A stretch of 64,000 bases of DNA from IMGVR_UViG_3300032293_002041:164973-228972; one strand, 5' to 3'. Counted from the stretch's first letter, positions 47,642 through 63,958 are shown. The notes: generated by a model from the sequence alone, not told the origin. Made by a program: numbers and translations.

Positions 47642-47732
47642 TTGAGCAATTATTCTTGCCTGAGATATGAAATTGATTACTATATTATAGCAATAATCTT
47701 TATTCTGTCAAAAGAGTTAATGGTTGACTAGC

Positions 47733-50066: not shown

Positions 50067-50815
50067 ATATTGTAACCGTATTTGATTATGATTTGAAAGA
50101 CATTAATAATCAGACTATGCTAAGGATGTTTCTTGGAGGCATTTTAGAGCATTGCCTTAATTTTCCATACAAGATATGGATTATTACTAGTCAAGTTGAT
50201 GCTATAGATAGTATGTTTAATAGTTCTTCGATAAGAACAATAAGAGCAAAAAACAATAAATATGATATTCCGTCAAACATGCCCAATATCAAATATAAGC
50301 TATATAATTTATGTAATTTAAATTTTGAGTTTATCTATTTAGATTGTGATACGTATGTTAATAGTGATTTGTCTTATCTTTGGGATAAAAGAAAAGATAA
50401 GCCATTCACATCAACTGTGCATCAAAAAAATATCGAAGGACATACTTCAGATAAAAGTGACTTTATGAACTCTGGATTGCAAATAGTCTCAGACCCGGAC
50501 TTTTTGGATTATGACAAACTCTATGAACTTGCACAACAACTAAACTTTAAGTTTGACGTGCCAGGCACAGACCAGGCATTGCTAGATGTTTATTGTAGAA
50601 AAATAGGATACAATTTTGTTCATAAAGACATAGGGTGTGAATACAATTCTTGTGCTGGCTATGGATTAGTTGATATTGATGATGAATATAACTTCAATAT
50701 TACCTATAAAAATAAAGATACAGAGTATGCGGTAAAAATTAATCATTACTGGAATGAGTTCAAACCATGGGTGATAAATTGTCCTATTTTCAAATTTTAT
50801 AAAGAGACTATTTAG
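50063..50815 (+). CDS. Glycosyltransferase family 8-like
   Basis: IYLDCD, MNSG, DQALL, YN, KINHY. Confidence 0.75.
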   Translation: MNIVTVFDYDLKDINNQTMLRMFLGGILEHCLNFPYKIWIITSQVDAIDSMFNSSSIRTIRAKNNKYDIPSNMPNIKYKLYNLCNLNFEFIYLDCDTYVNSDLSYLWDKRKDKPFTSTVHQKNIEGHTSDKSDFMNSGLQIVSDPDFLDYDKLYELAQQLNFKFDVPGTDQALLDVYCRKIGYNFVHKDIGCEYNSCAGYGLVDIDDEYNFNITYKNKDTEYAVKINHYWNEFKPWVINCPIFKFYKETI

Positions 50816-51726: not shown

Positions 51727-51733
51727 CAAAAAT

Positions 51734-52249
51734 ATGAATACTATTTATGAACCATATTGGTTTAATTATCAAGATTTTTATAAGTTTGTTAGTACACACA
51801 ACTATAAAACATTTGTAGAACTTGGCGTATGGCTTGGACATTCTGTTAGTTTTTTAGCGAAGCACTTGGAATATGGTTCTGTTATTTATGCTATTGACCT
51901 ATTCGATGATAGTTACGCCCATAAGAACTATGATCATTTAAATGGGTTAAGATATGAGTTATTTAAGAAAAATACAGCAGAGTATAAACATATAATAAAA
52001 CCTATACACTCTTGTAGTTGGGTCGCCGCAGATATGTTCGAAAATCAGTCTGTAGATTTCGTGTTTATAGATGCTGATCACTCTTACGAGTCAGTATGTA
52101 AGGACATAGACGGTTGGTTGAGCAAGATAAAAAAGGGAGGCATCTTGGCTGGGCACGATTATTTTAATGCAGACGGCGTAAAGCTAGCTGTAGATACAAA
52201 ACTAAATGACGTTAAAATATATGGTTCTTGTTGGTATAAATATATTTAA
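51734..52249 (+). CDS. Class I SAM-dependent methyltransferase (Methyltransf_24-like)
   Basis: VELGVWLG.S, DFVFIDADHSYE.V..DI..W..K.K.GG.LAGHDY. Confidence 0.85.
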   Translation: MNTIYEPYWFNYQDFYKFVSTHNYKTFVELGVWLGHSVSFLAKHLEYGSVIYAIDLFDDSYAHKNYDHLNGLRYELFKKNTAEYKHIIKPIHSCSWVAADMFENQSVDFVFIDADHSYESVCKDIDGWLSKIKKGGILAGHDYFNADGVKLAVDTKLNDVKIYGSCWYKYI

Positions 52250-52266
52250 CTTTTAAGTGATTAATT

Positions 52267-53148
52267 ATGGACAAAATACTATGGCATTACTTTTGTAGAA
52301 ATTTTTTAAACGATAAATACACAAAATATTTATTGATTAGCATTCATAGTTTAATAGAAACCGGTAAAGTTGACCCAAAAGATATTTTCATTTCTTTGGA
52401 TGGGCCACCAAATTTTGAAAACACGTATCTGCAAAAAATTATGGATTATGGAGTGAATATAACAAATGCGCCAAGATACAAAAATCATTCTAAAGCTACC
52501 AATCTATGCAGAGTTATAAAAGAAAATAGGGATATTGATAAAATAGTTCAAATTGATTGTGATACAATCATTACAGATAGCGACATTATTAATAAGATAT
52601 CAGATTTGGATGGAGCAGTAAATCATACTACAATAAACTGGCCAATTGCCAAGGTATTTGATAGTAGAGACGGATTGAAACATCCAACTTTTGGAGCAGA
52701 ACATTTTGTTGGGTCATCTGATCATTCTAGAAATTTATTGTTCTCTATTCGCAAGAACAATCAAGCACGATATGAGGCTTTTAAAGATTTTATGGAGCTA
52801 ATGTTCGACATGGACTTGGAAGCTACTATAGAAAAGTTAAAGACTGAAAGTAGAATGTTTGTGGGATATGCTTTTGTATTGAGTCCTAAGATTATACCGG
52901 AAAAATTTTTAAAGTTCATTTCAATATTAGACTTATTCTTCGGTGATGACGAGATGATATTTACTCTGGCTAGAGAGTATTGCGGTATTGAATATCATGA
53001 TATTAATAAAAATGGGAGAATAGTAACTGGGGCTGTTACCATGGAGGATTTTAATAGATATAAAGGAATAGTACATTTTCCAGTAAAAGATGAAGAAATT
53101 ATAGAACCAATAAATAAAATGGCTGAAGAAATATTGTGTGAGGAATAG
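52267..53148 (+). CDS. Putative glycosyltransferase-like protein
   Basis: VQIDCD (DxD), GDDE, IVHF; cluster context. Confidence 0.4.
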   Translation: MDKILWHYFCRNFLNDKYTKYLLISIHSLIETGKVDPKDIFISLDGPPNFENTYLQKIMDYGVNITNAPRYKNHSKATNLCRVIKENRDIDKIVQIDCDTIITDSDIINKISDLDGAVNHTTINWPIAKVFDSRDGLKHPTFGAEHFVGSSDHSRNLLFSIRKNNQARYEAFKDFMELMFDMDLEATIEKLKTESRMFVGYAFVLSPKIIPEKFLKFISILDLFFGDDEMIFTLAREYCGIEYHDINKNGRIVTGAVTMEDFNRYKGIVHFPVKDEEIIEPINKMAEEILCEE

Positions 53149-53152
53149 TAAT

Positions 53153-53773
53153 ATGAAGATAACAAGAGATCGAAGTCCCTTTTTCTTTGTACACACCTAT
53201 AAAAACTTAGGAACCACTGTTATTTCACAGCTGCATGAGGAATACAGAGTTAGGTTTTTTGGAAATAAGACATTAGATACTTGGGAAATTGAAAATGAAG
53301 AATCATTAGATCATGAAACAAAAGCAAATTTGTTTAAGGAAAAAGATAAACTTATATCTATAGATCATATCAAAATCGATGAATTGCTAAGTTTGGGAAT
53401 TCTGGACGAATGGGATCTGAATAATAGAAGATTTTTGTCTATTGTTAGGGAACCGATAAGTAGATTCTTATCTATGTGTAATTACTTAAAAAAACATCCA
53501 AAAGAAATGATGAGATATTTAAAACCTTGGCATAAACAAACTTCGTCTTTTGAATCAGCTCATCCTATTGATGTTACTTTAATGCTGATGGAAAAACCAA
53601 AATTGATAGAACAGTGGTTTGAGCAATTTAATCTTAAAATAACACTAGATAAAAAACTCAATGTTAGTAACAAACAATATTTTGTTGATGATATTTGTAA
53701 AGAAGACTTAGAAAAAATAAAGAAATTTTTTGAAGACGATTTTAAGCTTTATGAAAAATTAAAAAATAAATAG
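53153..53773 (+). CDS. Sulfotransferase family 2-like protein
   Basis: FFFVHTYKNLGTT (variant 5'-PSB loop), VREPISRFLS, NVS, YFEDD-like tail. Confidence 0.7.
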   Translation: MKITRDRSPFFFVHTYKNLGTTVISQLHEEYRVRFFGNKTLDTWEIENEESLDHETKANLFKEKDKLISIDHIKIDELLSLGILDEWDLNNRRFLSIVREPISRFLSMCNYLKKHPKEMMRYLKPWHKQTSSFESAHPIDVTLMLMEKPKLIEQWFEQFNLKITLDKKLNVSNKQYFVDDICKEDLEKIKKFFEDDFKLYEKLKNK

Positions 53774-53784
53774 GGTCTTGTATT

Positions 53785-54633
53785 ATGAAAATAGCATTCT
53801 TTGGAGCTTCAATAACTCAGCAAAAAACTGGCTATGTTAGCTTTTTTAAGAATCTGAATCAGAATTATTTTGTTAGTCAATTCGGATATGGAGGTATGAA
53901 TATTAGTGATGCGGGGGTTTGTTATATAGATGGGGTAATTCGGTCAAATCCTAATTATTGTTTTTTAGATTGGTTTAGTCCAGAATGCTATAGACCTCCA
54001 AAAAAGATCGATATATACGTTGATGTTTTAGTGGAAAAATTATTAACTATTGATTGTTATCCTATTTTCTTGTTCTTCTATAGGAAAGATATGGATCGTG
54101 GGTGGTTTGATATGTTTGAGCATTTAAAAAGCTATGGGCAAAAATATTCTATAAATAGTATTGATTTATCAAAACTGGAAAATGCTTCTGATTATCTGAG
54201 AGATTCTATTCATACTAATGATCTTGGATCAGAAAAGTATGGGTCAATTATTAGTGAAACATTTCATAATATGACTTTTCAAAAAAACTTTATTATTCCA
54301 GAGAAAAATAGATTGAGCAGAATAACCTCTATCAATTTGGGAATTGTGGCTAAAGAGTATGTTAAGCTTAAAAGTTCTGGATTTTCTAGTATTGTGGGAA
54401 TTTTACAAAAAGTGGGGCCTTATAGTGGTGGGGTCATTTGTATTAGTGGAGGTAAAGAGAGTATGGTGGATTTGAAAGATAAGTGGTCAGAAAGATATGA
54501 ACGGAAAACTATTAAGTTTAATATTGATACATTTTGTGGCGAGTTGGTTGTGAAGGTGTCAGAATCTAATAAGTTGGTGTGGGAAGAGCTATTTTATACG
54601 GGCGATCCTATTGAGTTGGTGGAATATGTATGA
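53785..54633 (+). CDS. SGNH/GDSL hydrolase-family protein
   Basis: IAFFGASIT block I; DSIHTN block V. Confidence 0.75.
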   Translation: MKIAFFGASITQQKTGYVSFFKNLNQNYFVSQFGYGGMNISDAGVCYIDGVIRSNPNYCFLDWFSPECYRPPKKIDIYVDVLVEKLLTIDCYPIFLFFYRKDMDRGWFDMFEHLKSYGQKYSINSIDLSKLENASDYLRDSIHTNDLGSEKYGSIISETFHNMTFQKNFIIPEKNRLSRITSINLGIVAKEYVKLKSSGFSSIVGILQKVGPYSGGVICISGGKESMVDLKDKWSERYERKTIKFNIDTFCGELVVKVSESNKLVWEELFYTGDPIELVEYV

Positions 54634-55333
54634 AAACATGATTTTTATATGTGGGTGTGGTCATTCTGGTACTACCATTTTAAATAAGATAATGAGTAAT
54701 CATAGAAATATTTATGGATTAGATTATGAGACTGGAATTTTTGTAAAATATAAGGGTGAAAAGCTAAATAGTGAAATTGATAAGTTAGATAAACAAAGAA
54801 AGTTATGCAAGAAAAGGTGGGTGTGTGAGAAGACTCCGGGACATGTTTATCATATAGATAATATATTTCAATTGGTAAGGTCTCCGAAAGTTATTGTGCT
54901 GGTGAGAGATGGACGAGATGTTGTGTGTAGTTTGCATAAAAGATATAGCAATTTTGAGTTTAGCATTAACAGATGGATAAAAGATAATCAGGAGTGGTTA
55001 AATAGTGAACATGGGGGCGAGTTACATGTGCTAAAATATGAAGACTTCGTGAAAAGACCTGGGGCTGAGCTTAGAAAGATATGTTCTTATCTAGAAGAAG
55101 ACTATGATGATGAAATGTTAAACTATCCTAAAGAAGAATTAGTATTACCAGAAGATATCTTTGACAAAGAAATTAGCGGAGAATATCATAGACTATTGAG
55201 ATTATATCAAATCAATCAGAATCTATATGATGGAAGCAAAAGATATTTGAAAGATCTTAATAAGGAGCAGATGAATCAGTTGTTTCTGAATGAATCTTTC
55301 GTGACTCTGATGACAAAATTAGGATACCTCTGA
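54626..55333 (+). CDS. Sulfotransferase (Sulfotransfer_3-like)
   Basis: FICGCGHSGTT, EKTP, VRDGRDV..S, KYEDFV..P..ELRKICSYL. Confidence 0.85.
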   Translation: MYENMIFICGCGHSGTTILNKIMSNHRNIYGLDYETGIFVKYKGEKLNSEIDKLDKQRKLCKKRWVCEKTPGHVYHIDNIFQLVRSPKVIVLVRDGRDVVCSLHKRYSNFEFSINRWIKDNQEWLNSEHGGELHVLKYEDFVKRPGAELRKICSYLEEDYDDEMLNYPKEELVLPEDIFDKEISGEYHRLLRLYQINQNLYDGSKRYLKDLNKEQMNQLFLNESFVTLMTKLGYL

Positions 55334-55416: not shown

Positions 55417-55713
55417 ATGAAAAAGGCTTTAGTTCTAGCATCATTAGTCCTAGGTATTGGTGCAGGAGAGACTTGTATGGGAGGTGATTGGGTGCCGATG
55501 ACTCAGGTAGTTCAAAAGGTGGAATATGTTCCATACTACTATTCTGTTCCGGCTGTAACTATGGTTCCGTTGGTTACTTATTATGCTCCGGTGGTAAAGT
55601 ATGAGAATGTGATGGTGGAAACTCAGAGTTGGTGTCTTTTAAAGAAATATCAGATGGTAACGGTGCCAAAAGTAGTTTATGTTCCTATAAGCCAGGGGCC
55701 TTATAGGTACTAG
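55417..55713 (+). CDS. Small secreted V/P/Y-rich protein
   Basis: Signal-peptide-like MKKALVLASLVLGIGAG. Confidence 0.6.
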   Translation: MKKALVLASLVLGIGAGETCMGGDWVPMTQVVQKVEYVPYYYSVPAVTMVPLVTYYAPVVKYENVMVETQSWCLLKKYQMVTVPKVVYVPISQGPYRY

Positions 55714-55827
55714 GGGCTATCATTATAGATTAGGTATTACATTTGTTTTAAGACCTACCTACTATTTGTCCACCTCCTGGGATTTTCCGAATACTTCTGC
55801 ATATACCATAAAAAACCAGAAAAACCC

Positions 55828-55909
55828 CCTAACCCTATGGTACGTAGGCACTTAGGGGCTATATGATGGGCAAAATTTGACGTAAGTGCTTATGCTGTAT
55901 GGATTTATG
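55828..55909. repeat. 82-bp cassette element E1 (eroded core)
   Basis: CCTAACCCTATG-GTACG-TAGGCACTTAGG / ggctatatgatgggcaaaatttga / CGTAAGTGCTTA-TGCTG-TATGGATTTATG. Confidence 0.8.
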
Positions 55910-55972
55910 ACTAATTTGAAGAATTTTTGTGTTTGGCATGAAATTATATTTGAAAAAATCCAAAGATTTCTC

Positions 55973-56000
55973 TTGAAAGTGTCGATAAATACTGTATAAT
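55973..56000 (+). promoter_or_regulatory. sigma70-type promoter with GTCGATA box
   Basis: TTGAAA-N16-TATAAT. Confidence 0.7.
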
Positions 56001-56040
56001 GAAAGCACAAGAGAACAAGAGACAAAAAGAGGACAAGAAA

Positions 56041-56274
56041 ATGGAAAACCTGATCGTTCTGAACACTGTGGCTGAGTTGATTGAGTTCCTTGACAACACC
56101 AGCCTTGATACCTTGGTTGGACGGGTTGCTTTTGCTTCCGATCTTCTCGATCATGTTCGTGCGAGCGGATACAACCAGATTGCAATCGACGACGAACTGG
56201 GCTTTATGGACGATGGTGGTTGGATCGAGATTGACGAGATGGGTTATGTTGTGGATGATTTTGCGGTCAACTGA
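56041..56274 (+). CDS. Small acidic protein (paralog of 56657..56896)
   Basis: ATG after purine-rich leader; MENLIVLNTVAEL...DTLVG. Confidence 0.75.
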   Translation: MENLIVLNTVAELIEFLDNTSLDTLVGRVAFASDLLDHVRASGYNQIAIDDELGFMDDGGWIEIDEMGYVVDDFAVN

Positions 56275-56473: not shown

Positions 56474-56475
56474 GA

Positions 56476-56557
56476 CGTAAAGCCTTACGACGTAAGGAGT
56501 TATGGTTTGCCGGGCGGGCCGAATTCGACGTAACTACTTATGAAACATAGACTTACG
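56476..56557. repeat. 82-bp cassette element E2
   Basis: CGTAAAGCCTTA-CGACG-TAAGGAGTTATG / gtttgccgggcgggccgaattcga / CGTAACTACTTA-TGAAA-CATAGACTTACG. Confidence 0.95.
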
Positions 56558-56590
56558 ACAACCTTACGAAATTGTAAGGAAACTTTTCGC

Positions 56591-57112: not shown

Positions 57113-57119
57113 GGCTTGA

Positions 57120-57201
57120 CGTAAAGCCTTATGTGGTAAAGACTTACGACTTGCCGGGCGGGCCGAATTCGACGTAAGTACTTGACAGATAACGACTTAC
57201 G
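57120..57201. repeat. 82-bp cassette element E3
   Basis: CGTAAAGCCTTA-TGTGG-TAAAGACTTACG / acttgccgggcgggccgaattcga / CGTAAGTACTTG-ACAGA-TAACGACTTACG. Confidence 0.95.
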
Positions 57202-57205
57202 ACAA

Positions 57206-57792: not shown

Positions 57793-58008
57793 ATGCTTCA
57801 GACCAACTGCAAAACTGTGACGAACAACCTTGACAAGATTTTCGCTGCTATGCGAGCTGGCAAGTATCACTGTGTGATCGACCCAAGGGGTAATGCTCAT
57901 GTGGGCCTTATCAACAGCATCATGCGTGAAGATGGTAGCGGAAAGAATTGGATCGTGACGGTGACCAGCCGTACAGTAAGTGAAAAGGTGTTCATTCACG
58001 CTTCGTGA
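57793..58008 (+). CDS. 71-aa hypothetical protein
   Basis: Purine leader; TGA directly abuts E4. Confidence 0.75.
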   Translation: MLQTNCKTVTNNLDKIFAAMRAGKYHCVIDPRGNAHVGLINSIMREDGSGKNWIVTVTSRTVSEKVFIHAS

Positions 58009-58090
58009 CGTAAACCCCTACCCTATAAGCACTTAGGGCTAGGCGGGCGGGCCGATTTTGACGTAAGTGTTTGCCATATAACGACTTACG
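58009..58090. repeat. 82-bp cassette element E4
   Basis: CGTAAACCCCTA-CCCTA-TAAGCACTTAGG / gctaggcgggcgggccgattttga / CGTAAGTGTTTG-CCATA-TAACGACTTACG. Confidence 0.95.
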
Positions 58091-58134
58091 GCAACCTTGC
58101 AGTATTGTAAGAAAACTTTTTCTGCTGTAGGCTA

Positions 58135-58163
58135 TTGACATTTGACGATAATAGATGTATAAT
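58135..58163 (+). promoter_or_regulatory. sigma70-type promoter with GACGATAAT box
   Basis: TTGACA-N17-TATAAT. Confidence 0.85.
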
Positions 58164-58185
58164 GATAGCACAAGAAAGAGGTGAG

Positions 58186-58350
58186 ATGATGGATTTCGAA
58201 ATTGGCAATAAGGTGATGGTAGGTGGGATTCAGGACAAGGGTACGATCATCGGATGGTTCTTCGATGAGGGGAATATGTGGGTTGTGCAGTTCCCCAACG
58301 GTCTGACCATCGACTGTTTTGAGCAAGAGCTGACCAAGATTGGCTCTTGA
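58186..58350 (+). CDS. 54-aa SH3/KOW-like protein
   Basis: MMDFEIGNKVMVGG...FDEGNMWVV; TGA lies inside the next TTGACA. Confidence 0.75.
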   Translation: MMDFEIGNKVMVGGIQDKGTIIGWFFDEGNMWVVQFPNGLTIDCFEQELTKIGS

Positions 58351-58375
58351 CAAGTACCTAACCCCTAGCTACAAT
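58347..58375 (+). promoter_or_regulatory. sigma70-type promoter
   Basis: TTGACA-N17-TACAAT. Confidence 0.75.
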
Positions 58376-58400
58376 TCAATCACAAGAAAGAGAGAAACTA

Positions 58401-58514
58401 ATGATTACGGTTATCGAATACGTTCAGCTGTTTGCCTTGATTGCTTTTGCTGGTTTCATTTCGTATACTGTTCACGAAGTGGCTAATGCTATCGATTCCA
58501 TTCTTCACGACTGA
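58401..58514 (+). CDS. 37-aa single-pass membrane peptide
   Basis: Manually translated; LFALIAFAGFISY. Confidence 0.6.
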   Translation: MITVIEYVQLFALIAFAGFISYTVHEVANAIDSILHD

Positions 58515-58557
58515 GGGAACTATGTCTCTGAAACATTGCTCATCGCAGGGGAACGTT

Positions 58558-58716
58558 ATGATTGCCAAAACTCTATCTGGTACTGACGTTACCATAAACG
58601 ACAGCGATATCGTTATTGTGGACGGTAAGCCCGTTATCGTGTTTTTCGTTGTTGACAGCAACGGACAGCATGGTATATTCAATCAGAACCAGTTGACCGA
58701 TTACAAAGAGGTTTGA
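58558..58716 (+). CDS. 52-aa hypothetical protein (alternative start 58522)
   Basis: MIAKTLSGTDVTIND...; start uncertain. Confidence 0.5.
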   Translation: MIAKTLSGTDVTINDSDIVIVDGKPVIVFFVVDSNGQHGIFNQNQLTDYKEV

Positions 58717-58718
58717 GT

Positions 58719-59018
58719 ATGACACACAGTGAAGCAGTGAAGATGGTTCGTGGTAAGACCAATAAGGATACTCGCAAGGTTGGCAACAACACCTATGCCT
58801 ACATCCAGGCCGATGGTAGCGTTGCAATAGAGTTGCATGGTACGAATGTCGTGGTGATTTATCCCGACGATACTGTTATGCTCAATAGTGGTGGATGGCA
58901 TACGCACACCACTAAGAAGCGTATCAATCAGTATTCACCCGTACAGGTATGCCAGAAGAACTATGAATGGTACCTGAAAGATGGCACACCATTTGAGGAT
59001 CGTATGGTAGTGAGTTGA
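58719..59018 (+). CDS. 99-aa phage hypothetical protein
   Basis: VAIELHGT.VV...LNSGGW.T.TTK.RIN; TGA abuts E5. Confidence 0.75.
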   Translation: MTHSEAVKMVRGKTNKDTRKVGNNTYAYIQADGSVAIELHGTNVVVIYPDDTVMLNSGGWHTHTTKKRINQYSPVQVCQKNYEWYLKDGTPFEDRMVVS

Positions 59019-59100
59019 TATAAAGCCTTGACCGTAAAGAACTTACGGCGAGGCGGGCGGGCCGGGATCGACGTAAGTGCTTACCCCATAAGGACTTACA
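59019..59100. repeat. 82-bp cassette element E5
   Basis: TATAAAGCCTTG-ACCGT-AAAGAACTTACG / gcgaggcgggcgggccgggatcga / CGTAAGTGCTTA-CCCCA-TAAGGACTTACA. Confidence 0.95.
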
Positions 59101-59143
59101 GTAACCTTACAGCATTGTAAGAAAACTTTTCTATCGTAAAGCA

Positions 59144-59172
59144 TTGACAATGGACGATAATATGTGTAGAAT
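59144..59172 (+). promoter_or_regulatory. sigma70-type promoter with GACGATAAT box
   Basis: TTGACA-N17-TAGAAT. Confidence 0.85.
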
Positions 59173-59197
59173 CATAGGACAAGAAAGAGAGTTTCAA

Positions 59198-59398
59198 ATG
59201 GAAAAGTCGGTTTCGGTTCAAGGTTTTACTCGTTCGCTCCCCACCATCTATCTGTACGACCATGTGGTCCGTCTGAAAAGTGGTGCATCCTACAGGGTGT
59301 CTCGATGCCATTCGCATCGTGAAGTGTACCAATACATGCGTTCACTAGGCTACGATCCTAAGGATATTGTGAGCGTCACTTCGGTGACCCCTAAGTAG
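59198..59398 (+). CDS. 66-aa basic protein (paralog of 60671..60871)
   Basis: MEKSVSVQGFTRSLP... Confidence 0.75.
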   Translation: MEKSVSVQGFTRSLPTIYLYDHVVRLKSGASYRVSRCHSHREVYQYMRSLGYDPKDIVSVTSVTPK

Positions 59399-59404
59399 AG
59401 GGGC

Positions 59405-59432
59405 TTGACGCGGGGGAAAAGTTTGGTAGAAT
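59405..59432 (+). promoter_or_regulatory. sigma70-type promoter
   Basis: TTGACG-N16-TAGAAT. Confidence 0.7.
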
Positions 59433-59455
59433 ACAAAAAAGAGAAAGAGAGAAAA

Positions 59456-59638
59456 ATGAATCCCAACTACTTCCAGCCCACCTTTGAGCAGATGAACACC
59501 AGTACCATTCGGCTTTGGCTGTATGAAGCACAGGTTAGACTGCCCGAATCTACCGGAGCGGTGAGAGATATCCTGTGTGAGGGAATCAAGGGTGCTGCAA
59601 CTGAGCTTCTGTACAGATACAGGCAAGCAAAGGGTTGA
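59456..59638 (+). CDS. 60-aa helical hypothetical protein
   Basis: MNPNYFQPTFEQ...; TGA abuts E6. Confidence 0.7.
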   Translation: MNPNYFQPTFEQMNTSTIRLWLYEAQVRLPESTGAVRDILCEGIKGAATELLYRYRQAKG

Positions 59639-59720
59639 CGCAAAGCCTTACGGCGTAAGCACTTACGTCGAGCCGGGCGGGCCGCTTTTGACGCAAGTCG
59701 TTATGCTGCAACACTTTACG
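59639..59720. repeat. 82-bp cassette element E6
   Basis: CGCAAAGCCTTA-CGGCG-TAAGCACTTACG / tcgagccgggcgggccgcttttga / CGCAAGTCGTTA-TGCTG-CAACACTTTACG. Confidence 0.95.
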
Positions 59721-59727
59721 CTCATCT

Positions 59728-59744
59728 AGCAAATACTGTGCCAA
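59728..59744 (-). promoter_or_regulatory. sigma54 (-24/-12) consensus site, reverse orientation
   Basis: Minus strand TTGGCACA-GTAT-TTGCT. Confidence 0.45.
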
Positions 59745-59807
59745 ACCCAAACAAAATGACGCAAAGTTTTGTCAAAATCTCTTGACAATAAAATCTCTAG
59801 ATTTCTC

Positions 59808-59836
59808 TTGCAAACTCAAGATTGCTCTGGTATAAT
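59808..59836 (+). promoter_or_regulatory. sigma70-type promoter, GACGATA box just downstream of -10
   Basis: TTGCAA-N17-TATAAT-GACGATA. Confidence 0.75.
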
Positions 59837-59876
59837 GACGATATAAGAGATAGAGAAGAAAGAAAGAGAGAAAAGA

Positions 59877-60023
59877 ATGTACGAGATTGGTGATAAGGTT
59901 GTGGTGAATGGATCGGTTGGAAAGATTGTTTCCTATCACTATGATGAGGGAAACGTGTGGACGGTTAGGATGCTCGGTGGGCAGCACTGGGATTTTTGCG
60001 AAAGCGAAATGTCTCCCGCTTGA
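59877..60023 (+). CDS. 48-aa SH3/KOW-like protein
   Basis: Manually translated; MYEIGDKVVVNG...YDEGNVWTV; TGA inside the next TTGACA. Confidence 0.75.
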   Translation: MYEIGDKVVVNGSVGKIVSYHYDEGNVWTVRMLGGQHWDFCESEMSPA

Positions 60024-60048
60024 CAGGAGTTGAGAAAATCGCTACAAT
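60020..60048 (+). promoter_or_regulatory. sigma70-type promoter
   Basis: TTGACA-N17-TACAAT. Confidence 0.75.
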
Positions 60049-60073
60049 GCACTCACAAGAAAGAGAGAAAGAA

Positions 60074-60454
60074 ATGAAAGAAAAGTTCCCTATCATCGAA
60101 AATGCCAAGCGTCAAGCCCGTATGATCTTCAAGGGTATCGCTGTGCCGATGCTTGTGGAAATCCCTGACGATAAGGTTGTGGACGATGTCGATTACGTTT
60201 ACGGTGTGACTGACCACAAGCGTTACGTTGTGAGCGAAAAGGTTCTCAAGTTCAATCGTACCGCACTGAAGAACATTGGCAAGGTTCGCAAGGAAAAGGC
60301 TGACCCCCGATATGTGGGGGGTGAAGATACCATGATCGTTCCGGTTGGCAAGCCGGGAAGTCGTGAGCGTGTTGAAGAACTGACCAGACAGTACGCTGCC
60401 ATTGCTGCTTGTGGTGAAGAAATCAGCCCGTTCAGCTTCAAGGGCGATGAATGA
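60074..60454 (+). CDS. 126-aa hypothetical protein
   Basis: MKEKFPIIENAKRQ...; purine leader. Confidence 0.75.
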   Translation: MKEKFPIIENAKRQARMIFKGIAVPMLVEIPDDKVVDDVDYVYGVTDHKRYVVSEKVLKFNRTALKNIGKVRKEKADPRYVGGEDTMIVPVGKPGSRERVEELTRQYAAIAACGEEISPFSFKGDE

Positions 60455-60487
60455 ACTATCACTACTGCACAAAAGCATAGCAGTTGA

Positions 60488-60569
60488 CGTAAAGCGTTAC
60501 CCTATAAAGACTTAGGGCAAACGCGGCCCGCCTCGCGAAGCGTAAGTGCTTGTGGGGTAATGACTTACG
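60488..60569. repeat. 82-bp cassette element E7 (core inverted)
   Basis: CGTAAAGCGTTA-CCCTA-TAAAGACTTAGG / gcaaacgcggcccgcctcgcgaag / CGTAAGTGCTTG-TGGGG-TAATGACTTACG. Confidence 0.95.
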
Positions 60570-60613
60570 ATAACCTTACGATATTGCAAGGAAAGTTTTT
60601 CTGGCCTAAGCTA

Positions 60614-60642
60614 TTGACAAATGACGATAATACTGGTATAAT
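60614..60642 (+). promoter_or_regulatory. sigma70-type promoter with GACGATAAT box
   Basis: TTGACA-N17-TATAAT. Confidence 0.85.
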
Positions 60643-60670
60643 GATAGAAGAAAGAAAGAGAGAGTTGAAG

Positions 60671-60871
60671 ATGGAAAAGTCAGTTTCAGTCAAGAGTTTC
60701 ACCCGTTCGCTGCCTCCGATCTATACCCACGATTTCATCGTGCGTATGAAAGACGGGAAAGCCTATAAGCTTTCTCGTTGTGGCTCGAATCGTCAAGCCT
60801 ACGAAATCATGCGTTCAAATGGTTTCGATACCAAGGAAATCGTGAGGGTTGACGCCGCCCCTAAGAAGTAG
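60671..60871 (+). CDS. 66-aa basic protein (paralog of 59198..59398)
   Basis: MEKSVSVKSFTRSLP... Confidence 0.75.
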   Translation: MEKSVSVKSFTRSLPPIYTHDFIVRMKDGKAYKLSRCGSNRQAYEIMRSNGFDTKEIVRVDAAPKK

Positions 60872-60943
60872 GGGTTGAGTGTCGTCTCTCCTAATCCTTC
60901 GGATTTGCGGCTGTTGGGTATAGTCAGCCTAAAGACTGGCCTA

Positions 60944-60972
60944 TTGACAAGCCGATAACTATAGTATAGAAT
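60944..60972 (+). promoter_or_regulatory. sigma70-type promoter with GCCGATA box
   Basis: TTGACA-N17-TAGAAT. Confidence 0.75.
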
Positions 60973-60990
60973 GGTGCAAAAAGGGGAGAC

Positions 60991-61182
60991 ATGGTAGGTG
61001 ATTTTATTCTGGTGTGGGCTTGGCTGGGGCTTATGCTTTTTGTTTTGGGGTGTGTCTACTTTCTCTCTATTGTGGGGGAAGTTTGGCAGAGAATAAATGA
61101 GTATGAGGCTATGAGGGCCAGGGGTTTTACTCTTATGAAAGATGATAAGGGTGATGATTTCTGGGTGGGATACGGGGATTGA
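60991..61182 (+). CDS. 63-aa single-pass membrane protein
   Basis: ILVWAWLGLMLFVLGCVYFLSIVG; GGAG RBS. Confidence 0.7.
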   Translation: MVGDFILVWAWLGLMLFVLGCVYFLSIVGEVWQRINEYEAMRARGFTLMKDDKGDDFWVGYGD

Positions 61183-61206
61183 CCGAATAACAATGGAGAT
61201 ACAAGG

Positions 61207-61317
61207 ATGTATCAATTTGATTTTGTTAGTGTCGCTTTCGGCTATATTTGTGGTATCGTACTGTATGCTAGTATGTCAAATATCATGTATATGGAGGAAA
61301 ATGATGAAAGTGAGTGA
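61207..61317 (+). CDS. 36-aa membrane peptide (MYQFDFVSVAFGYICGIVLY...)
   Basis: Manually translated; GGAG upstream. Confidence 0.5.
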   Translation: MYQFDFVSVAFGYICGIVLYASMSNIMYMEENDESE

Positions 61318-61381
61318 CTACATATTGTGGGGGGTGTGTTTTATAATCGGCTGCACCATGACGTATCTCCTTCACCAGTAA
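61301..61381 (+). CDS. 26-aa membrane peptide running into E8 (MMKVSDYILWGVCFIIG...)
   Basis: GGAGG RBS; stop lies inside the left site of E8. Confidence 0.45.
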   Translation: MMKVSDYILWGVCFIIGCTMTYLLHQ

Positions 61382-61443
61382 GGATTTACGACCAGTCCGG
61401 CCCGCCCCGCGAAGCGTAAGTGCTTATGTTGCAACACTTTACG
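61362..61443. repeat. 82-bp cassette element E8 (core inverted)
   Basis: CGTATCTCCTTC-ACCAG-TAAGGATTTACG / accagtccggcccgccccgcgaag / CGTAAGTGCTTA-TGTTG-CAACACTTTACG. Confidence 0.9.
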
Positions 61444-61486
61444 ACAAACTTACAGCATTGTAAGGAAACTTTACTGCTGAAGGGTA

Positions 61487-61515
61487 TTGACAGTTGACGA
61501 TAATAGGTATAGAAT
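61487..61515 (+). promoter_or_regulatory. sigma70-type promoter with GACGATAAT box
   Basis: TTGACA-N17-TAGAAT. Confidence 0.85.
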
Positions 61516-61542
61516 GGTAGGACAAGAAAGAAAGGGAGTCAA

Positions 61543-61740
61543 ATGCTAGAAGTTGGGAATAAGGTTTCGGTGCTGCTGCCATACTGGGTTCAAGTCCATG
61601 ATCGCGTTGAGCCATATGTTAACGCTACGGTTGTGAAGGTTTCCGAAAACACCGTCACAGTAGAATATGATGCTCCAGATACATGGAGTGGTAAGGCATG
61701 TCTGGTTGTTAATGATCTAGGCCGGATTTCCAAGATTTGA
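61543..61740 (+). CDS. 65-aa SH3/KOW-like protein
   Basis: MLEVGNKVSV...ATVVKVSENTVTVEYD; TGA inside the next TTGACA. Confidence 0.7.
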   Translation: MLEVGNKVSVLLPYWVQVHDRVEPYVNATVVKVSENTVTVEYDAPDTWSGKACLVVNDLGRISKI

Positions 61741-61764
61741 CAACAGGGAAAAGTTTGGTAGAAT
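61737..61764 (+). promoter_or_regulatory. sigma70-type promoter
   Basis: TTGACA-N16-TAGAAT; shares GGGAAAAGTTTGGTAGAATAC with the promoter at 59405. Confidence 0.75.
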
Positions 61765-61789
61765 ACCAACACAAGAAAGAGAGAGCAGA

Positions 61790-61969
61790 ATGACGAATAC
61801 TTTCTACTGTTTGCAATGTGATGCTGATTGTGGGCCTTTTAAGCATTGTTGTGCTTGCGAGGACAATCCTGAGATGCAGAATGTTCAACATCCCGGCTTC
61901 ACCTCTAGTGCGGAAATTCAGCAGGAAATCGACGCAGAAGATTTCTGGTACGAGTATGATCAGCGTTGA
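61790..61969 (+). CDS. 59-aa Cys-rich acidic protein
   Basis: Manually translated; CLQC...C...HCCAC; TGA inside the next TTGACA. Confidence 0.7.
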   Translation: MTNTFYCLQCDADCGPFKHCCACEDNPEMQNVQHPGFTSSAEIQQEIDAEDFWYEYDQR

Positions 61970-61994
61970 CAGAGTTGATTAGGCTTGGTAGAAT
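61966..61994 (+). promoter_or_regulatory. sigma70-type promoter
   Basis: TTGACA-N17-TAGAAT. Confidence 0.75.
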
Positions 61995-62037
61995 AAGCCC
62001 ATACTCTATAATAGAAGAACAAGAAAGAGAGAACAGA

Positions 62038-62259
62038 ATGAAGAACGAACTCAATGATGGAGAACTGGTTCAGTGTGACAATAAGTGGTTTGGCCGGGTG
62101 TGTGATTTTGCTCGCACCGAAGATGGCGAGATTGTTGCATACTACGTGGTTCCTCTTGACGACAGAGAGAACACATGGGTTGACAGCGATAACATTGTTT
62201 CCTATGCTGCTCTTCGTGCAGCTTTTGGCCCGATTGACTATATCGAAAAGTCTCTCTAA
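62038..62259 (+). CDS. 73-aa SH3/Tudor-like protein
   Basis: LNDGELVQC...GRV...YYVV...TWVDSDNI. Confidence 0.65.
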   Translation: MKNELNDGELVQCDNKWFGRVCDFARTEDGEIVAYYVVPLDDRENTWVDSDNIVSYAALRAAFGPIDYIEKSL

Positions 62260-62269
62260 AAATCCTTGA

Positions 62270-62351
62270 CATAAACCCTTGCTGCGTAAACACTTACGAC
62301 GAGCGGGGCGGGCCGCGTTCGCTGTAACTCTTTATTTACCAACACTTTACG
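62270..62351. repeat. 82-bp cassette element E9
   Basis: CATAAACCCTTG-CTGCG-TAAACACTTACG / acgagcggggcgggccgcgttcgc / TGTAACTCTTTA-TTTAC-CAACACTTTACG. Confidence 0.95.
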
Positions 62352-62413
62352 GTAACTGCAAAATTTTTCATCTTTGGCACGAAATTATATTTTGGAATTT
62401 TCCAAGTTTCTGC

Positions 62414-62442
62414 TTGACGCTGGTCGATAATAAGTGTAGAAT
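62414..62442 (+). promoter_or_regulatory. sigma70-type promoter with GTCGATAAT box
   Basis: TTGACG-N17-TAGAAT. Confidence 0.8.
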
Positions 62443-62479
62443 GACAGCATCACGAACGGAAACCACAAGGAACAGAATC

Positions 62480-62653
62480 ATGCTGAACTTCGACGAGATC
62501 AACGACATTCTGAACGACATGGCCGAAGCGGGTATTGTTGAGCCGATGGTCGAGCCGATTGACGATCCCAGCGTGGAAGTCAATTTTTGGGATTGGGCAG
62601 ACATTGTTGGTGCTGTTGAAGATTTTGTCCCAGAGGAGTATGATCATGCTTAG
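62480..62653 (+). CDS. 57-aa acidic protein with no Lys or Arg
   Basis: MLNFDEINDILNDMAEAG... Confidence 0.7.
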   Translation: MLNFDEINDILNDMAEAGIVEPMVEPIDDPSVEVNFWDWADIVGAVEDFVPEEYDHA

Positions 62654-62720
62654 TACGATTGCTTTTGTTGTTGCATACGTTGGCCTGTTTTACATCACCA
62701 CCATCATGAGGGATTGGTAA
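62646..62720 (+). CDS. 24-aa membrane peptide (MLSTIAFVVAYVGLFYITTIMRDW)
   Basis: Bridges neighbours with overlapping start and stop. Confidence 0.45.
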   Translation: MLSTIAFVVAYVGLFYITTIMRDW

Positions 62721-62980
62721 TGAGTTACGAGTATGACGATTTCGAGGATTTTTTCAGTGCGGATTCTGACCCTAATGGAGACGGCGATTACGATCCGTCG
62801 TATGACGATGATTCGTTTGATGATAGTATGGATGGTGATGCTGAATCTGCGTTGGCTTCCGCTGGATGGGGAACAGATGAGGATTACGGCTGTTATGGGG
62901 ACGATGGAGTAGAGGATTTCCACTCTGATGAGGCTGTAGGGTTTGTTGATTATAATGAAGATGGCCCATACGACGACTGA
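62720..62980 (+). CDS. 86-aa hyper-acidic protein; DNA-mimic candidate
   Basis: About 32 Asp/Glu, no Lys/Arg; DGDAESALASAGWGTDEDYG. Confidence 0.7.
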   Translation: MSYEYDDFEDFFSADSDPNGDGDYDPSYDDDSFDDSMDGDAESALASAGWGTDEDYGCYGDDGVEDFHSDEAVGFVDYNEDGPYDD

Positions 62981-62989
62981 GCCATTCGC

Positions 62990-63071
62990 CCTAAACCCTT
63001 TGTGCGAAAGCACTTAGGGTCAGCGGGGCGGGCCGCTTTTGACGTAAGTCCTTGAAGCTAATAGACTTAGG
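62990..63071. repeat. 82-bp cassette element E10
   Basis: CCTAAACCCTTT-GTGCG-AAAGCACTTAGG / gtcagcggggcgggccgcttttga / CGTAAGTCCTTG-AAGCT-AATAGACTTAGG. Confidence 0.95.
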
Positions 63072-63099
63072 ATAAAAAAGAATTTTTTAAGATACCCTC

Positions 63100-63128
63100 T
63101 TGCATTGGTCGATAATATATGGTAGACT
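63100..63128 (+). promoter_or_regulatory. sigma70-type promoter with GTCGATAAT box
   Basis: TTGCAT-N17-TAGACT. Confidence 0.65.
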
Positions 63129-63170
63129 AGTGTGTAATCACTAACCAAACCCCCAGTAGGAAACTGTAAG

Positions 63171-63620
63171 ATGATCAACGTCAACCTCTCGCTCTCTCTC
63201 ACCTCTGCTCTCTCTCTGCTCCGCAACACCAGCATCTCCGACACTATTCGTGACGAAATCCAGAGAGCCATTGAAATCGGCTTGTCTCAGTGCGATAGCG
63301 ATGTCAAGCCTACTCGTCATATGAATCTGACTCTGAAAAGCGTCCCTGTCAAAGAGAAGATTCACTGCATTGCTGCCGTGAGAAACACTCTGCTGTGGGG
63401 TCTGAAAGACAGCAAGGATTTCGTTGACGTTGTGTTGGGTAAACTCGACCTTGAAAGCCCCGGCATCGAATCATATGACAGTGCTGGCTATTGGTCTCCC
63501 GTCTATAAGGGTGGAACCCCTAACACTCTGACTGAGCGTACCGAACTGGTCAAAGAGCTGGCAAAGCAGCTTAGTGAGATTGGGTGCGAGGTTTACACGG
63601 ACACTTACAACTGCACCTAA
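63171..63620 (+). CDS. Protein with ribosomal bL12 (L7/L12) C-terminal-like domain
   Basis: KIHCIAAVRNTLLWGLKDSKDFVD resembles K.AVIKAVR..TGLGLKEAKDLVE; P.TL...VKELAKQLSEIGCEV resembles P..LK...AE.LKK.LEEAGAEV. Confidence 0.7.
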   Translation: MINVNLSLSLTSALSLLRNTSISDTIRDEIQRAIEIGLSQCDSDVKPTRHMNLTLKSVPVKEKIHCIAAVRNTLLWGLKDSKDFVDVVLGKLDLESPGIESYDSAGYWSPVYKGGTPNTLTERTELVKELAKQLSEIGCEVYTDTYNCT

Positions 63621-63702
63621 TTTAAACCCTTATGGCGTAAACACTTACGTCAAACGGGGCGGGCCGGATTTGCTGTAACTCCTTATGCTATAACACTTTA
63701 TA
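63621..63702. repeat. 82-bp cassette element E11
   Basis: TTTAAACCCTTA-TGGCG-TAAACACTTACG / tcaaacggggcgggccggatttgc / TGTAACTCCTTA-TGCTA-TAACACTTTATA. Confidence 0.95.
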
Positions 63703-63735
63703 TCAACCTTACGGTATTGCAAGAAAAATTTTCAT

Positions 63736-63763
63736 TTGACAGCTAAAGTTTCTATGCTATACT
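63736..63763 (+). promoter_or_regulatory. sigma70-type promoter, GTCGATAAT box just downstream of -10
   Basis: TTGACA-N16-TATACT-T-GTCGATAAT. Confidence 0.7.
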
Positions 63764-63793
63764 TGTCGATAATAGAGTAGAGGGAGAAACAGA

Positions 63794-63958
63794 ATGACGA
63801 CCGTGATGGTTTTCGATATCTGGACAGATGAGTTGCTGGACAGTGTGTCTGCTGCAACTTCATCCGAAGCGTGGAGTGAGGCGTGGGACAAGTGGGGTTG
63901 GCCCGATTGTATGGGTGCTGATGTTAGGTTTAAAGAGGTGAATGATGAGTCGGTATGA
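63794..63958 (+). CDS. 54-aa Trp-rich acidic protein
   Basis: Manually translated; MTTVMVFDIWTDELLD... Confidence 0.65.
   Translation: MTTVMVFDIWTDELLDSVSAATSSEAWSEAWDKWGWPDCMGADVRFKEVNDESV

What the first reader, a model, noticed from the sequence alone, without database searches (positions are those of the whole stretch)
60488..61443. Core is inverted in E7 and E8 while the flanking arms keep the normal orientation
Seen: nine elements read ...GGGCGGGCCG... (E1 eroded), but E7 (gcaaacgcggcccgcctcgcgaag) and E8 (accagtccggcccgccccgcgaag) carry the reverse complement. Their reverse complements put GGGCCG at exactly positions 12-17. The downstream palindrome and promoter stay in the standard orientation. 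The reverse complement of the E7 core ends GGGCCGCGTTTGC, close to forward E9 GGGCCGCGTTCGC. E7 spacers CCCTA and TGGGG are near-complementary. Because the two inner arms are inverted repeats, recombination between left and right sites would flip the core and keep the architecture. Inference: a footprint of inversion at these sites. E7 and E8 share gcgaag, so one old flip followed by duplication is also possible.
Basis: partly seen in the sequence, partly recalled or inferred. Interest (0 to 1): 0.78.

Follow-up and report, generated by a model that had tools for sequence, protein, structure and literature searches.

The report
Old flipped core in phage repeats
Two of eleven repeated intergenic elements in an uncultured freshwater giant phage carry their GC-rich centre backwards, but this is an old, inherited sequence variant shared by all relatives, not a working genetic switch.

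Summary
E7 (core 60524-60533) and E8 (61398-61407) carry the reverse complement of GGGCGGGCCG in the same register as eight intact forward elements. Outer boxes, downstream hairpin and promoter keep their polarity.

The window is the end of a 229-kb uncultured freshwater phage contig. The elements separate small early-gene cassettes that have sigma-70-type promoters. Each has four TAAG-NN-CTTA boxes around a centre of exactly 24 nt, then a weak hairpin and a promoter. The family occurs in many related phages, and gene order around it is shuffled. The closest known thing is the PeSL promoter/stem-loop cassette of T4-type phages.

The flip is not a live switch:
- 33 distinct E8 orthologues and 12 E7 orthologues all have the C-rich orientation.
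- 31 of 31 public contexts carrying the E7/E8 spacer CGCGAAG are C-rich.
- The source sample's contigs show one orientation.

E7 and E8 share a 30-nt block (28/30) that starts at the core's left edge, so they have one origin. About a quarter of family members are inverted, some as exact 24-nt mirror images. Rare spacer inversions between the mutually inverted boxes therefore do occur. Element function remains inferred.

The parts
60486..60570 (+). Element E7: box 1, box 2, 24-nt centre (60517-60540), box 3, box 4
60524..60533 (-). E7 core; reads AGGCGGGCCG on the - strand (CGGCCCGCCT on +)
60524..60553 (+). Block shared with E8 (reversed core + spacer CGCGAAG + box 3), 28/30 identical, starting at the core's left edge
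60574..60591 (+). E7 promoter-proximal hairpin CCTTAC-N6-GCAAGG followed by AAAGTTTTT, in standard orientation
60614..60642 (+). Sigma-70-type promoter after E7 (TTGACA, 17 nt, TATAAT; 12 of 12)
60560..61381 (+). Cassette of small ORFs between E7 and E8. The ORF listing intervals: 60560-60871, 60991-61182, 61142-61381. True starts are probably internal, and there is an extra promoter at 60944-60972.
61360..61444 (+). Element E8: box 1 (inside the end of the upstream ORF), box 2, 24-nt centre (61391-61414), box 3, box 4
61398..61407 (-). E8 core; reads GGGCGGGCCG on the - strand
61398..61427 (+). Block shared with E7
61448..61465 (+). E8 promoter-proximal hairpin ACTTAC-N6-GTAAGG, in standard orientation
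61487..61515 (+). Sigma-70-type promoter after E8 (TTGACA, 17 nt, TAGAAT)
55826..55910 (+). E1, eroded core (TGATGGGCAA), at the GC step where the array begins
56474..56558 (+). E2, forward core 56512-56521
57118..57202 (+). E3, forward core 57156-57165
58007..58091 (+). E4, forward core 58045-58054
59017..59101 (+). E5, forward core 59055-59064
59637..59721 (+). E6, forward core 59675-59684
62268..62352 (+). E9, forward core 62306-62315
62988..63072 (+). E10, forward core 63026-63035
63619..63703 (+). E11, forward core 63657-63666; the contig ends at 64000

Best explanation
E7 and E8 belong to a family of composite intergenic cassettes in the early, hyperplastic region of an uncultured freshwater phage of about 229 kb. 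Each cassette has four TAAG-NN-CTTA boxes arranged as an imperfect palindrome of about 85 bp around a GC-rich centre of exactly 24 nt. A weak hairpin with a T run and a strong sigma-70-type promoter follow.

Shown:
- The anatomy and the fixed 24-nt spacing.
- The spread of the family across many related phages.
- Shuffled gene order, with chimeric elements at the joints.
- The reversed core in E7 and E8, fixed in every relative examined.
- A 30-nt block shared by E7 and E8.

Inferred:
- The reversed centre arose long ago as an inversion of the spacer between the mutually inverted boxes 2 and 3. The likely routes are polymerase template switching or an antiparallel repair patch between copies.
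- The allele 'reversed core + CGCGAAG + box 3' then spread from one element to its neighbour by homologous patch recombination, or by insertion of the cassette that E7 and E8 now flank.
- The cassettes work like PeSLs: they insulate or attenuate transcription, or bind a regulator, upstream of an early promoter, and they offer short homology for cassette shuffling.
- Core orientation has little or no effect today. It is not a switch.
For: Anatomy. The centre is 24 nt in 145 of 148 box-defined elements.

Promoters: 22 + strand sites with at least 10 of 12 matches; 39 promoter-like sites against 15.3 expected.

Phage context: structural-gene hits. The window is the end of IMGVR_UViG_3300032293_002041. 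More than 4000 related terminases, many on contigs of 190-240 kb. Runs are lake and freshwater metagenomes.

Family and orientation: promoter direction and purine skew agree 127 to 1. There are 142 forward and 55 inverted elements, or 111 to 44 after removing duplicates.

Fixed state: E8-left context in 33 distinct sequences and E7-left context in 12, none with a forward core. The pattern SGGCSSGCCN+CGCGAAGCGTAAGT gives 31 of 31 C-rich. Source-run contigs match the window exactly through E7 and E8.

Common origin: positions +10..+30 are 95% identical between E7 and E8 against 45-65% for other pairs, while the left halves are 50% alike. The block is 28/30 and starts at the core edge. The mirror of CGCGAAG is never a left spacer in 111 forward elements.

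Real spacer inversions elsewhere: the centres of L018 14313 and L059 1676 are reverse complements of the commonest forward spacers plus core. A clade-specific core variant, GGGCGGGGCG, occurs in both orientations.

Shuffling and chimeras: the gene upstream and the gene downstream of an element match different window cassettes in many relatives. One joint runs from the E4 left half to the E9 right half with a different centre. The L122 E7 orthologue has the same left half and a different right half.

Precedent: PeSLs (PMC2839356, PMC4122927). Inverted-repeat spacer inversion by template switching (PMC8604942 and PMC8794818, listed).
Against: - Flanks cannot fix the inversion boundaries. Spacers are quasi-palindromic, and E7's left spacer fits both as a direct left spacer and as a mirrored right spacer. 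CGCGAAG fits neither orientation of the forward profile.
- The core and its reverse complement already agree at 6 of 10 positions, and symmetric or intermediate centres are common. Part of the 'inverted' class could have arisen by substitutions.
- No function of the element was tested.
- RNAalifold finds no consensus structure.
- The long palindrome shows no covariation beyond column composition: 63.2% paired against 62.9% in shuffles.
- Single-copy fold z-scores are weak, -0.4 to -3.2.
- No classical terminator was found.
- Only assembled contigs were available, not raw reads, so rare flipped molecules cannot be excluded.
Confidence: 0.6

Rival explanations
1. Active inversion switch. A site-specific recombinase pairs the inner arms and flips the core, so that a phage population holds both states.
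For: The centre is flanked by inverted repeats, and both orientations exist in the family.
Against: - Orientation is fixed in 33 E8 and 12 E7 orthologous contexts and in 31 of 31 CGCGAAG contexts.
- The source run has one orientation in its contigs.
- E7 and E8 share one allele by descent.
- No recombinase domain was found in the window ORFs scanned.
- Two duplex sites 24 bp apart cannot pair (general knowledge of invertases and tyrosine recombinases).
- Inverted elements do not share one fixed crossover point.
Confidence: 0.04
2. No inversion at all. The centre is a GC-rich quasi-palindrome that drifts. The forward and 'inverted' 10-mers are two mirror-image states reached by a few substitutions from a symmetric ancestor such as CGGCCGGCCG, perhaps under selection for a motif that is read on either strand.
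For: - The two 10-mers agree at 6 of 10 positions.
- 70 of 148 box-defined centres are more than one mismatch from either 10-mer (the 'mid' and 'poor' classes), and 28 fit both orientations equally well.
- Distant relatives have symmetric centres with A and T runs.
- In L114 2246 and L037 4485 only the 10-mer differs from forward orthologues, while both spacers stay standard.
Against: - Exact 24-nt mirror images that include both spacers exist (L018 14313, L059 1676).
- The two exact mirror 10-mers are by far the commonest, at 22 and 20 of 148.
- A clade-specific core variant occurs in both orientations.
Confidence: 0.15
3. The elements are recombination sites of a dedicated cassette-shuffling system, similar to lox/FRT or integron attC sites. 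The asymmetric core sets polarity, so cores in opposite orientation would make recombination give inversion instead of excision.
For: - A four-box imperfect palindrome sits at the 3' end of each small cassette.
- The spacing is strict.
- Cassette order is shuffled, with chimeric elements at the joints.
- E7 and E8 have the same polarity and flank one cassette.
Against: - Arrays are co-directional in 77 of 78 loci, so no segment inversions are seen between cores of opposite polarity.
- Breakpoints lie at different places: the core edge, the centre, and right of box 4.
- The box sequences do not fit the attC R''/R' consensus (sequence inspection).
- Every cassette has its own promoter.
- No integrase was found in the window.
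Confidence: 0.06
4. The centre is a one-way transcription terminator or RNA element. Reversing it in E7 and E8 removes termination on the + strand, which changes read-through into the next cassette. Orientation would then have a function but would be fixed by selection.
For: - Forward centres have a 3-4 bp GC stem followed by a short T run.
- E7 and E8 lack the T run on the + strand.
- G.T pairs outnumber A.C pairs 130 to 64 in forward spacers, and the bias reverses in inverted ones, 30 to 48.
- Distant relatives have an A run, a GC palindrome and a T run.
Against: - The stems are too short and the T runs too short or interrupted for the terminator scan.
- No consensus RNA structure or covariation was found.
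- No Rfam family matches.
Confidence: 0.12

Closest known systems
PeSLs (promoter-early stem-loops) of T4-type phages (PMC2839356, PMC4122927)
   Same: - Repeated composite cassettes lie between small orphan genes in a hyperplastic region.
- A palindromic G/C-containing stem-loop sits directly upstream of a strong sigma-70-type early promoter.
- Related phages differ by insertion, deletion and replacement of cassettes, with the joints in the repeats.
- GGGC/GCCC motifs are involved.
   Different: - The phage is not T4-like: the portal protein and 8.5 kb of DNA find nothing among 50,697 phage records.
- The palindrome is much longer, with four TAAG-NN-CTTA boxes and a fixed 24-nt centre.
- The centre is asymmetric and occurs in both orientations.
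- Terminator activity and mini-circles were not tested here.
Inversion of the spacer between short inverted repeats by polymerase template switching (PMC8604942, PMC8794818); hairpin-associated small inversions in plastid DNA (PMC12371153)
   Same: A short spacer between inverted repeats is found as its exact reverse complement in some copies while the arms stay unchanged. No dedicated recombinase is needed. Events are rare and become fixed.
   Different: Here the spacer carries a strongly conserved 10-bp motif and lies in a multi-copy regulatory cassette. After it arose, the inverted allele spread between copies.
Invertase or tyrosine-recombinase switches (Hin/Gin/Cin, fimS, shufflons) and lox/FRT sites
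   Same: Inverted arms flank an asymmetric core, and two orientations are seen.
   Different: - The segment is 24 bp, not hundreds of bp.
- No population heterogeneity was found.
- No recombinase was found in the window.
- Orientation is fixed across relatives.
Integron attC sites and bacterial REP/BIME elements
   Same: Imperfect palindromes made of paired boxes lie at the 3' ends of genes or cassettes, in arrays of similar copies. BIMEs also have a central asymmetric motif between inverted units.
   Different: - The attC box consensus is not met.
- The cassettes carry their own promoters.
- No IntI or RAYT gene was seen.
- The setting is a phage early region.

Membership tests
PeSL-like promoter/stem-loop cassette | Repeated motif in intergenic spaces of a region rich in small orphan genes | tested here: met
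   Eleven elements lie between small + strand ORFs in 55.8-64.0 kb. Most of those ORFs have no Pfam family.
PeSL-like promoter/stem-loop cassette | Strong sigma-70-type early promoter directly downstream of the palindrome | tested here: met
   Promoters with 10-12 of 12 matches lie 80-115 nt after the cores of E3, E4, E5, E7, E8, E9 and E11. The region has 39 promoter-like sites against 15.3 expected.
PeSL-like promoter/stem-loop cassette | Stem-loop that terminates or attenuates upstream transcription | tested here: inconclusive
   Single copies fold as one long hairpin, but z-scores are only -0.4 to -3.2. There is no consensus structure or covariation. Only the small hairpin of E3 passes the terminator scan. 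Activity cannot be tested with these tools.
PeSL-like promoter/stem-loop cassette | Related genomes differ by cassette gain, loss or reordering with joints in the repeats | tested here: met
   Upstream and downstream flanks of one element match different window cassettes in many loci. One joint runs E4-left to E9-right. L122 carries a chimeric E7.
PeSL-like promoter/stem-loop cassette | Host genome is a T4-type myovirus | tested here: not met
   No DNA or portal-protein match among 50,697 phage records. The resemblance is therefore one of working principle, not membership of the T4 PeSL family.
PeSL-like promoter/stem-loop cassette | Excised cassette mini-circles during infection | not testable with these tools
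   Needs inverse PCR on infected cells.
Site-specific invertible switch | Both orientations coexist in one population or between close strains | tested here: not met
   Source-run contigs show one orientation (a weak test, because contigs drop rare variants). 31 of 31, 33 of 33 and 12 of 12 related contexts have the same orientation.
Site-specific invertible switch | Recombinase gene (serine invertase or tyrosine recombinase) nearby | tested here: not met
   No such domain was found in the window ORFs scanned. The other 165 kb of the genome were not examined.
Site-specific invertible switch | Invertible segment bounded by inverted repeats and long enough for the sites to pair | tested here: not met
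   The inverted boxes are present, but the segment is 24 bp. That this is too short is general knowledge, not a tool result.
Inverted-repeat spacer inversion (template-switch type) | Spacer equals the exact reverse complement of the spacer in related copies, with arms unchanged | tested here: met
   Met for L018 14313 and L059 1676, whose whole 24 nt mirror the commonest forward centre. Partly met for E7: the reverse complement of positions 1-20 of its 24-nt centre fits the forward consensus at 18 of 19 compared positions, by eye on the consensus. E8 fits less well.
Integron attC site | R''/R' boxes RYYYAAC ... GTTRRRY, an IntI integrase, promoterless cassettes | tested here: not met
   The outer boxes read GTAAAsCCTT and AACgACTTAC on either strand and do not fit. 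No integrase was found in the window. Each cassette has its own promoter.

The most novel reading that the evidence does not exclude
The four-box elements could be the recombination sites of a phage-borne cassette-exchange system (PeSL-like, or functionally like lox or attC sites). A factor would read the conserved asymmetric 10-bp core and set site polarity. The shared reversed block in E7 and E8 would then be the footprint of one cassette inserted in the opposite polarity. Alternatively, the core could be a one-way terminator whose reversal rewires read-through between early cassettes.
Probability: 0.12. Interest if true: 0.7.

Novelty: new variant of a known kind. Interest (0 to 1): 0.33.

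Why it matters
The flip has little importance in itself. It is an old, fixed spacer inversion, or an orientation allele, of a kind already known from short inverted repeats.

The context is more useful. A very abundant clade of uncultured freshwater phages of about 200-240 kb carries a large family of strictly spaced four-box palindromic cassettes next to consensus early promoters, and gene order is shuffled around them. That extends the PeSL idea of regulatory repeats as joints for modular shuffling beyond T4-type phages. It also gives a defined sequence motif with which to search for the binding factor, the terminator activity and the recombination products.

Tried and rejected
- Known RNA family: Rfam at E up to 1 gave only one chance-level snoRNA hit.
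- Conserved RNA hairpin: RNAalifold on 46 diverse forward elements gave -0.43 kcal/mol and 3 pairs. A forced long-palindrome structure gave 63.2% pairing, but column shuffles gave 62.9%. Mutual information was dominated by subfamily signal, and the local box palindromes extend only weakly.
- Identifying the phage: megablast of 8.5 kb and tblastn of the portal against INPHARED found nothing. Terminase homologues are all unnamed metagenome proteins.
- Host: a genome-contig scan hit MAGs of five unrelated groups, probably mis-binned phage contigs.
- Read-level heterogeneity: only Logan contigs are served for the holding runs, so rare variants could not be counted.
- Inversion boundaries from spacer profiles: not resolvable, because the spacers are quasi-palindromic.
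- GCGAAGC mini-hairpin as the reason for the CGCGAAG spacer: rejected, because orthologues carry variants (CGCGAAT, CGCGAGT, CGCAAAG) that break the stem.
- DGR repeats near the Mtd_N and FGE-sulfatase proteins: none found in 1-55700.

Full report
**1. The observation**

The 10-mer GGGCGGGCCG, allowing one mismatch, occurs ten times in the 64-kb window against 0.31 expected. All ten lie between 56.5 and 63.7 kb. Eight are on the + strand. Two are on the - strand, at 60524-60533 (E7) and 61398-61407 (E8). An eleventh, eroded copy (E1) lies near 55864. In the alignment of the eleven elements the two reverse-complement cores fill exactly the columns of the forward cores (alignment A1; coordinates).

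**2. What the elements are**

The window is phage DNA. It holds portal, capsid-like, terminase and many tail-fibre-like genes and a 4061-aa ORF. It is the last 64 kb of the IMG/VR contig IMGVR_UViG_3300032293_002041, which is 228,972 bp long. Neither 8.5 kb of its DNA nor its portal protein matches any of 50,697 deposited phage genomes. More than 4000 related terminases exist in metagenomes, many on contigs of 190-240 kb. The sequencing runs that hold the sequence are lake and freshwater metagenomes.

At about 55.9 kb the G+C content rises from 0.30-0.34 to 0.45-0.46. From there to the contig end the + strand carries small ORFs, nearly all without a Pfam family. They sit behind near-consensus sigma-70-type promoters: 39 promoter-like sites against 15.3 expected, and 22 + strand sites with at least 10 of 12 matches.

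Each element starts at or just after a stop codon. Its parts, in order:
- box 1 (GACGTAAAsCCTTA);
- box 2 (cGTAAGcaCTTAcG);
- a 24-nt centre made of a 7-nt spacer, the 10-nt core and a 7-nt spacer;
- box 3 (CGTAAGTsCTTAt);
- box 4 (AACgACTTACG);
- usually a small hairpin, CCTTAC-N6-GTAAGG, with AAAsTTTT;
- the promoter.

The boxes are themselves palindromic (TAAG-NN-CTTA). Boxes 2 and 3 are therefore both direct and inverted copies of each other, and their 'orientation' cannot be read. Polarity is shown only by box 1, box 4, the hairpin and the promoter, and those are standard in E7 and E8.

**3. The family**

A pattern scan of IMG/VR found the same architecture in scores of contigs, many of 150-240 kb. 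I oriented each element by its downstream promoter and by the purine skew of its flanks; the two criteria agree 127 to 1. With that, 142 elements have the core forward relative to transcription and 55 have it reversed. After removing duplicates the counts are 111 and 44.

I then defined elements by their boxes alone, in loci fetched through a neighbouring protein. In that set the centre is exactly 24 nt in 145 of 148 elements. The two commonest 10-mers at its middle are the mirror pair CGGCCCGCCC (22) and GGGCGGGCCG (20). The rest are GC-rich and often symmetric variants.

Gene order around the elements is shuffled between relatives. The gene upstream and the gene downstream of one element often match different window cassettes. 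A contig from a sister sample joins the left half of E4 to the right half of E9 through a different centre. The closest relative's E7 (L122, neighbouring protein 98% identical) keeps E7's left half but has another right half.

**4. Structure or motif?**

Single copies fold as one long hairpin with the core at the tip, but only weakly better than shuffled sequence (z -0.4 to -3.2). RNAalifold finds no consensus structure in 46 diverse copies. A forced palindromic pairing gives 63.2% paired cells against about 33% when slid. Column-preserving shuffles give 62.9%, so there is no covariation. No Rfam family matches, and there is no classical terminator apart from the small hairpin of E3.

The symmetry therefore comes from conserved, strictly spaced half-sites. 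That is what a protein-binding array or recently copied repeats would give. A function for a folded RNA or DNA is not shown.

**5. Is the flip active?**

The evidence says it is not.
- All 33 distinct sequences with the E8 left context (the end of the upstream membrane-protein gene plus box 2) have a C-rich or near-symmetric centre. So do all 12 with the E7 left context. None has the forward core.
- I scanned IMG/VR and the JGI metagenome collection with a pattern that leaves the four orientation-diagnostic positions free (S) but requires the E7/E8 spacer and box 3. This gave 31 distinct contexts, and all 31 are C-rich.
- In the source run two contigs cover 58000-63900 with no differences, and no alternative contig exists at either core. 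This is a weak test, because contigs drop rare variants and raw reads were not available.
- Arrays are co-directional in 77 of 78 loci. The one exception looks like a miscalled direction.
- No recombinase domain was found in the window ORFs scanned.
- From general knowledge, two duplex sites 24 bp apart cannot be paired by an invertase or a tyrosine recombinase.

**6. One event or two?**

E7 and E8 are each other's nearest relatives on the right side: 95% identity over +10..+30 against 45-65% for all other pairs. On the left side they are only 50% alike. The shared block is the reversed core, the spacer CGCGAAG and box 3. It is 28/30 identical and begins exactly at the core's left edge. The mirror image of CGCGAAG is never used as a left spacer in 111 forward elements, yet it marks 17 or more of the 44 reversed ones.

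So the E7/E8 state is one allele of single origin that moved between elements. It also sits in two further, unrelated element contexts. E7 and E8 flank one cassette (60560-61381). A shared block of this kind is what homologous insertion of a cassette, or a local conversion patch, would leave. That last step is inference.

**7. Do true inversions occur in the family?**

They do, rarely. Several reversed elements (L018 14313, L059 1676, L012 157, and the L034 and L110 types) have centres whose reverse complement is the commonest forward left spacer, the core, and a common forward right spacer. These are whole-centre mirror images. A clade-specific core variant (GGGCGGGGCG) is found in both orientations. 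Elements downstream of the E10, E2 and E3 upstream genes are forward in some relatives and reversed in others, although cassette shuffling can also produce that pattern.

Other cases differ only in the 10-mer (L114 2246, L037 4485). The two 10-mers already agree at 6 of 10 positions, so some 'flips' may have arisen by substitution from symmetric centres.

The mechanism that best fits rare, fixed inversions of a 24-nt spacer between inverted repeats of 12-14 bp is polymerase template switching, or an antiparallel repair patch. Both are described for short inverted repeats (PMC8604942 and PMC8794818).

**8. Comparison with known systems**

The closest known system is the PeSL of T4-type phages. 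It is a stem-loop, often with G and C runs, placed directly upstream of a sigma-70-type early promoter. It is repeated between orphan genes of hyperplastic regions and serves as the joint for modular shuffling and for mini-circles (PMC2839356, PMC4122927). The present elements share the placement, the promoter and the shuffling. They differ in three ways: they sit in an unrelated phage clade, they have a four-box palindrome with a fixed 24-nt centre, and their core is asymmetric. Terminator activity and circles are untested.

They do not meet the defining features of invertase switches or of integron attC sites (see Membership tests).

**9. Verdict**

It is not supported as a present-day mechanism. 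The finding itself is ordinary. The cassette family around it is an undescribed PeSL-like variant in an abundant group of uncultured freshwater phages, and that is the more interesting result.

Noticed in passing
window 55700-56200: G+C rises from 0.30-0.34 to 0.45-0.46 exactly where the element array and the early cassettes begin. The early region is also strongly purine-skewed on the + strand.
   Followed up: partly
window 22000-24000: A G+C island of 0.52 lies inside a tail-fibre-like ORF (22127-23146, - strand) in a genome of otherwise about 0.33 G+C. It may be an acquired receptor-binding module.
   Followed up: no
window 6711-18896 (-): A 4061-aa ORF whose only Pfam hit is a He_PIG Ig domain. 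It contains an 87-bp tandem duplication (13804-13977) and further internal repeats of 123 nt and 65 nt.
   Followed up: no
window 820-1758 (-) and 28643-30403 (-): One ORF has an Mtd_N (major tropism determinant) domain and another has an FGE-sulfatase / C-type-lectin-fold domain. Both folds are typical of targets of diversity-generating retroelements. No template/variable repeat pair was found in 1-55700.
   Followed up: partly
window 41099-55333: A block of glycan-modification genes: GDP-mannose 4,6-dehydratase, RgpF-like, GT8-like, GT-D-like, three sulfotransferase-like proteins and a methyltransferase.
   Followed up: no
window 40371-40853 (-): An ERCC4-family nuclease ORF overlaps the start of the large terminase gene. 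It is a structure-specific nuclease that could process branched or cruciform DNA.
   Followed up: no
window 63171-63620 (+) and 58713-59018 (+): One early protein has a stretch like the C-terminal domain of ribosomal protein L7/L12 (E 1.7e-5, 25.5 bits, just under the 25.9-bit cut-off). Another matches Kyano_Gp96 of cyanophages.
   Followed up: no
window 60331-60360: In the source run the contig left of this point has depth 34 and the one right of it has depth 58.5. This suggests that two co-occurring strains share the right part of the array.
   Followed up: no
L125, L132, L138, L145, L147 (about 4380-4530); L024: In some relatives a second kind of repeat, with GTACA-type palindromes (tgtacactagtgtacgacgttacactag...), follows the E7-upstream gene ahead of the next element.
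   Followed up: no
L227-L233: The element pattern occurs in MAGs labelled Planktophila, Alphaproteobacteria, Methylococcaceae, Bacteroidia and Gammaproteobacteria. Such inconsistent taxonomy suggests phage contigs binned into bacterial genomes.
   Followed up: no
P0074: A 1080-aa relative of the terminase carries intein and LAGLIDADG domains (PF14890, PF14528).
   Followed up: no
window 42893-43558 (-): A 221-aa ORF with a weak Sigma70_r2 match (E 3.9e-4, below the cut-off). It may be a phage sigma factor for later genes.
   Followed up: no
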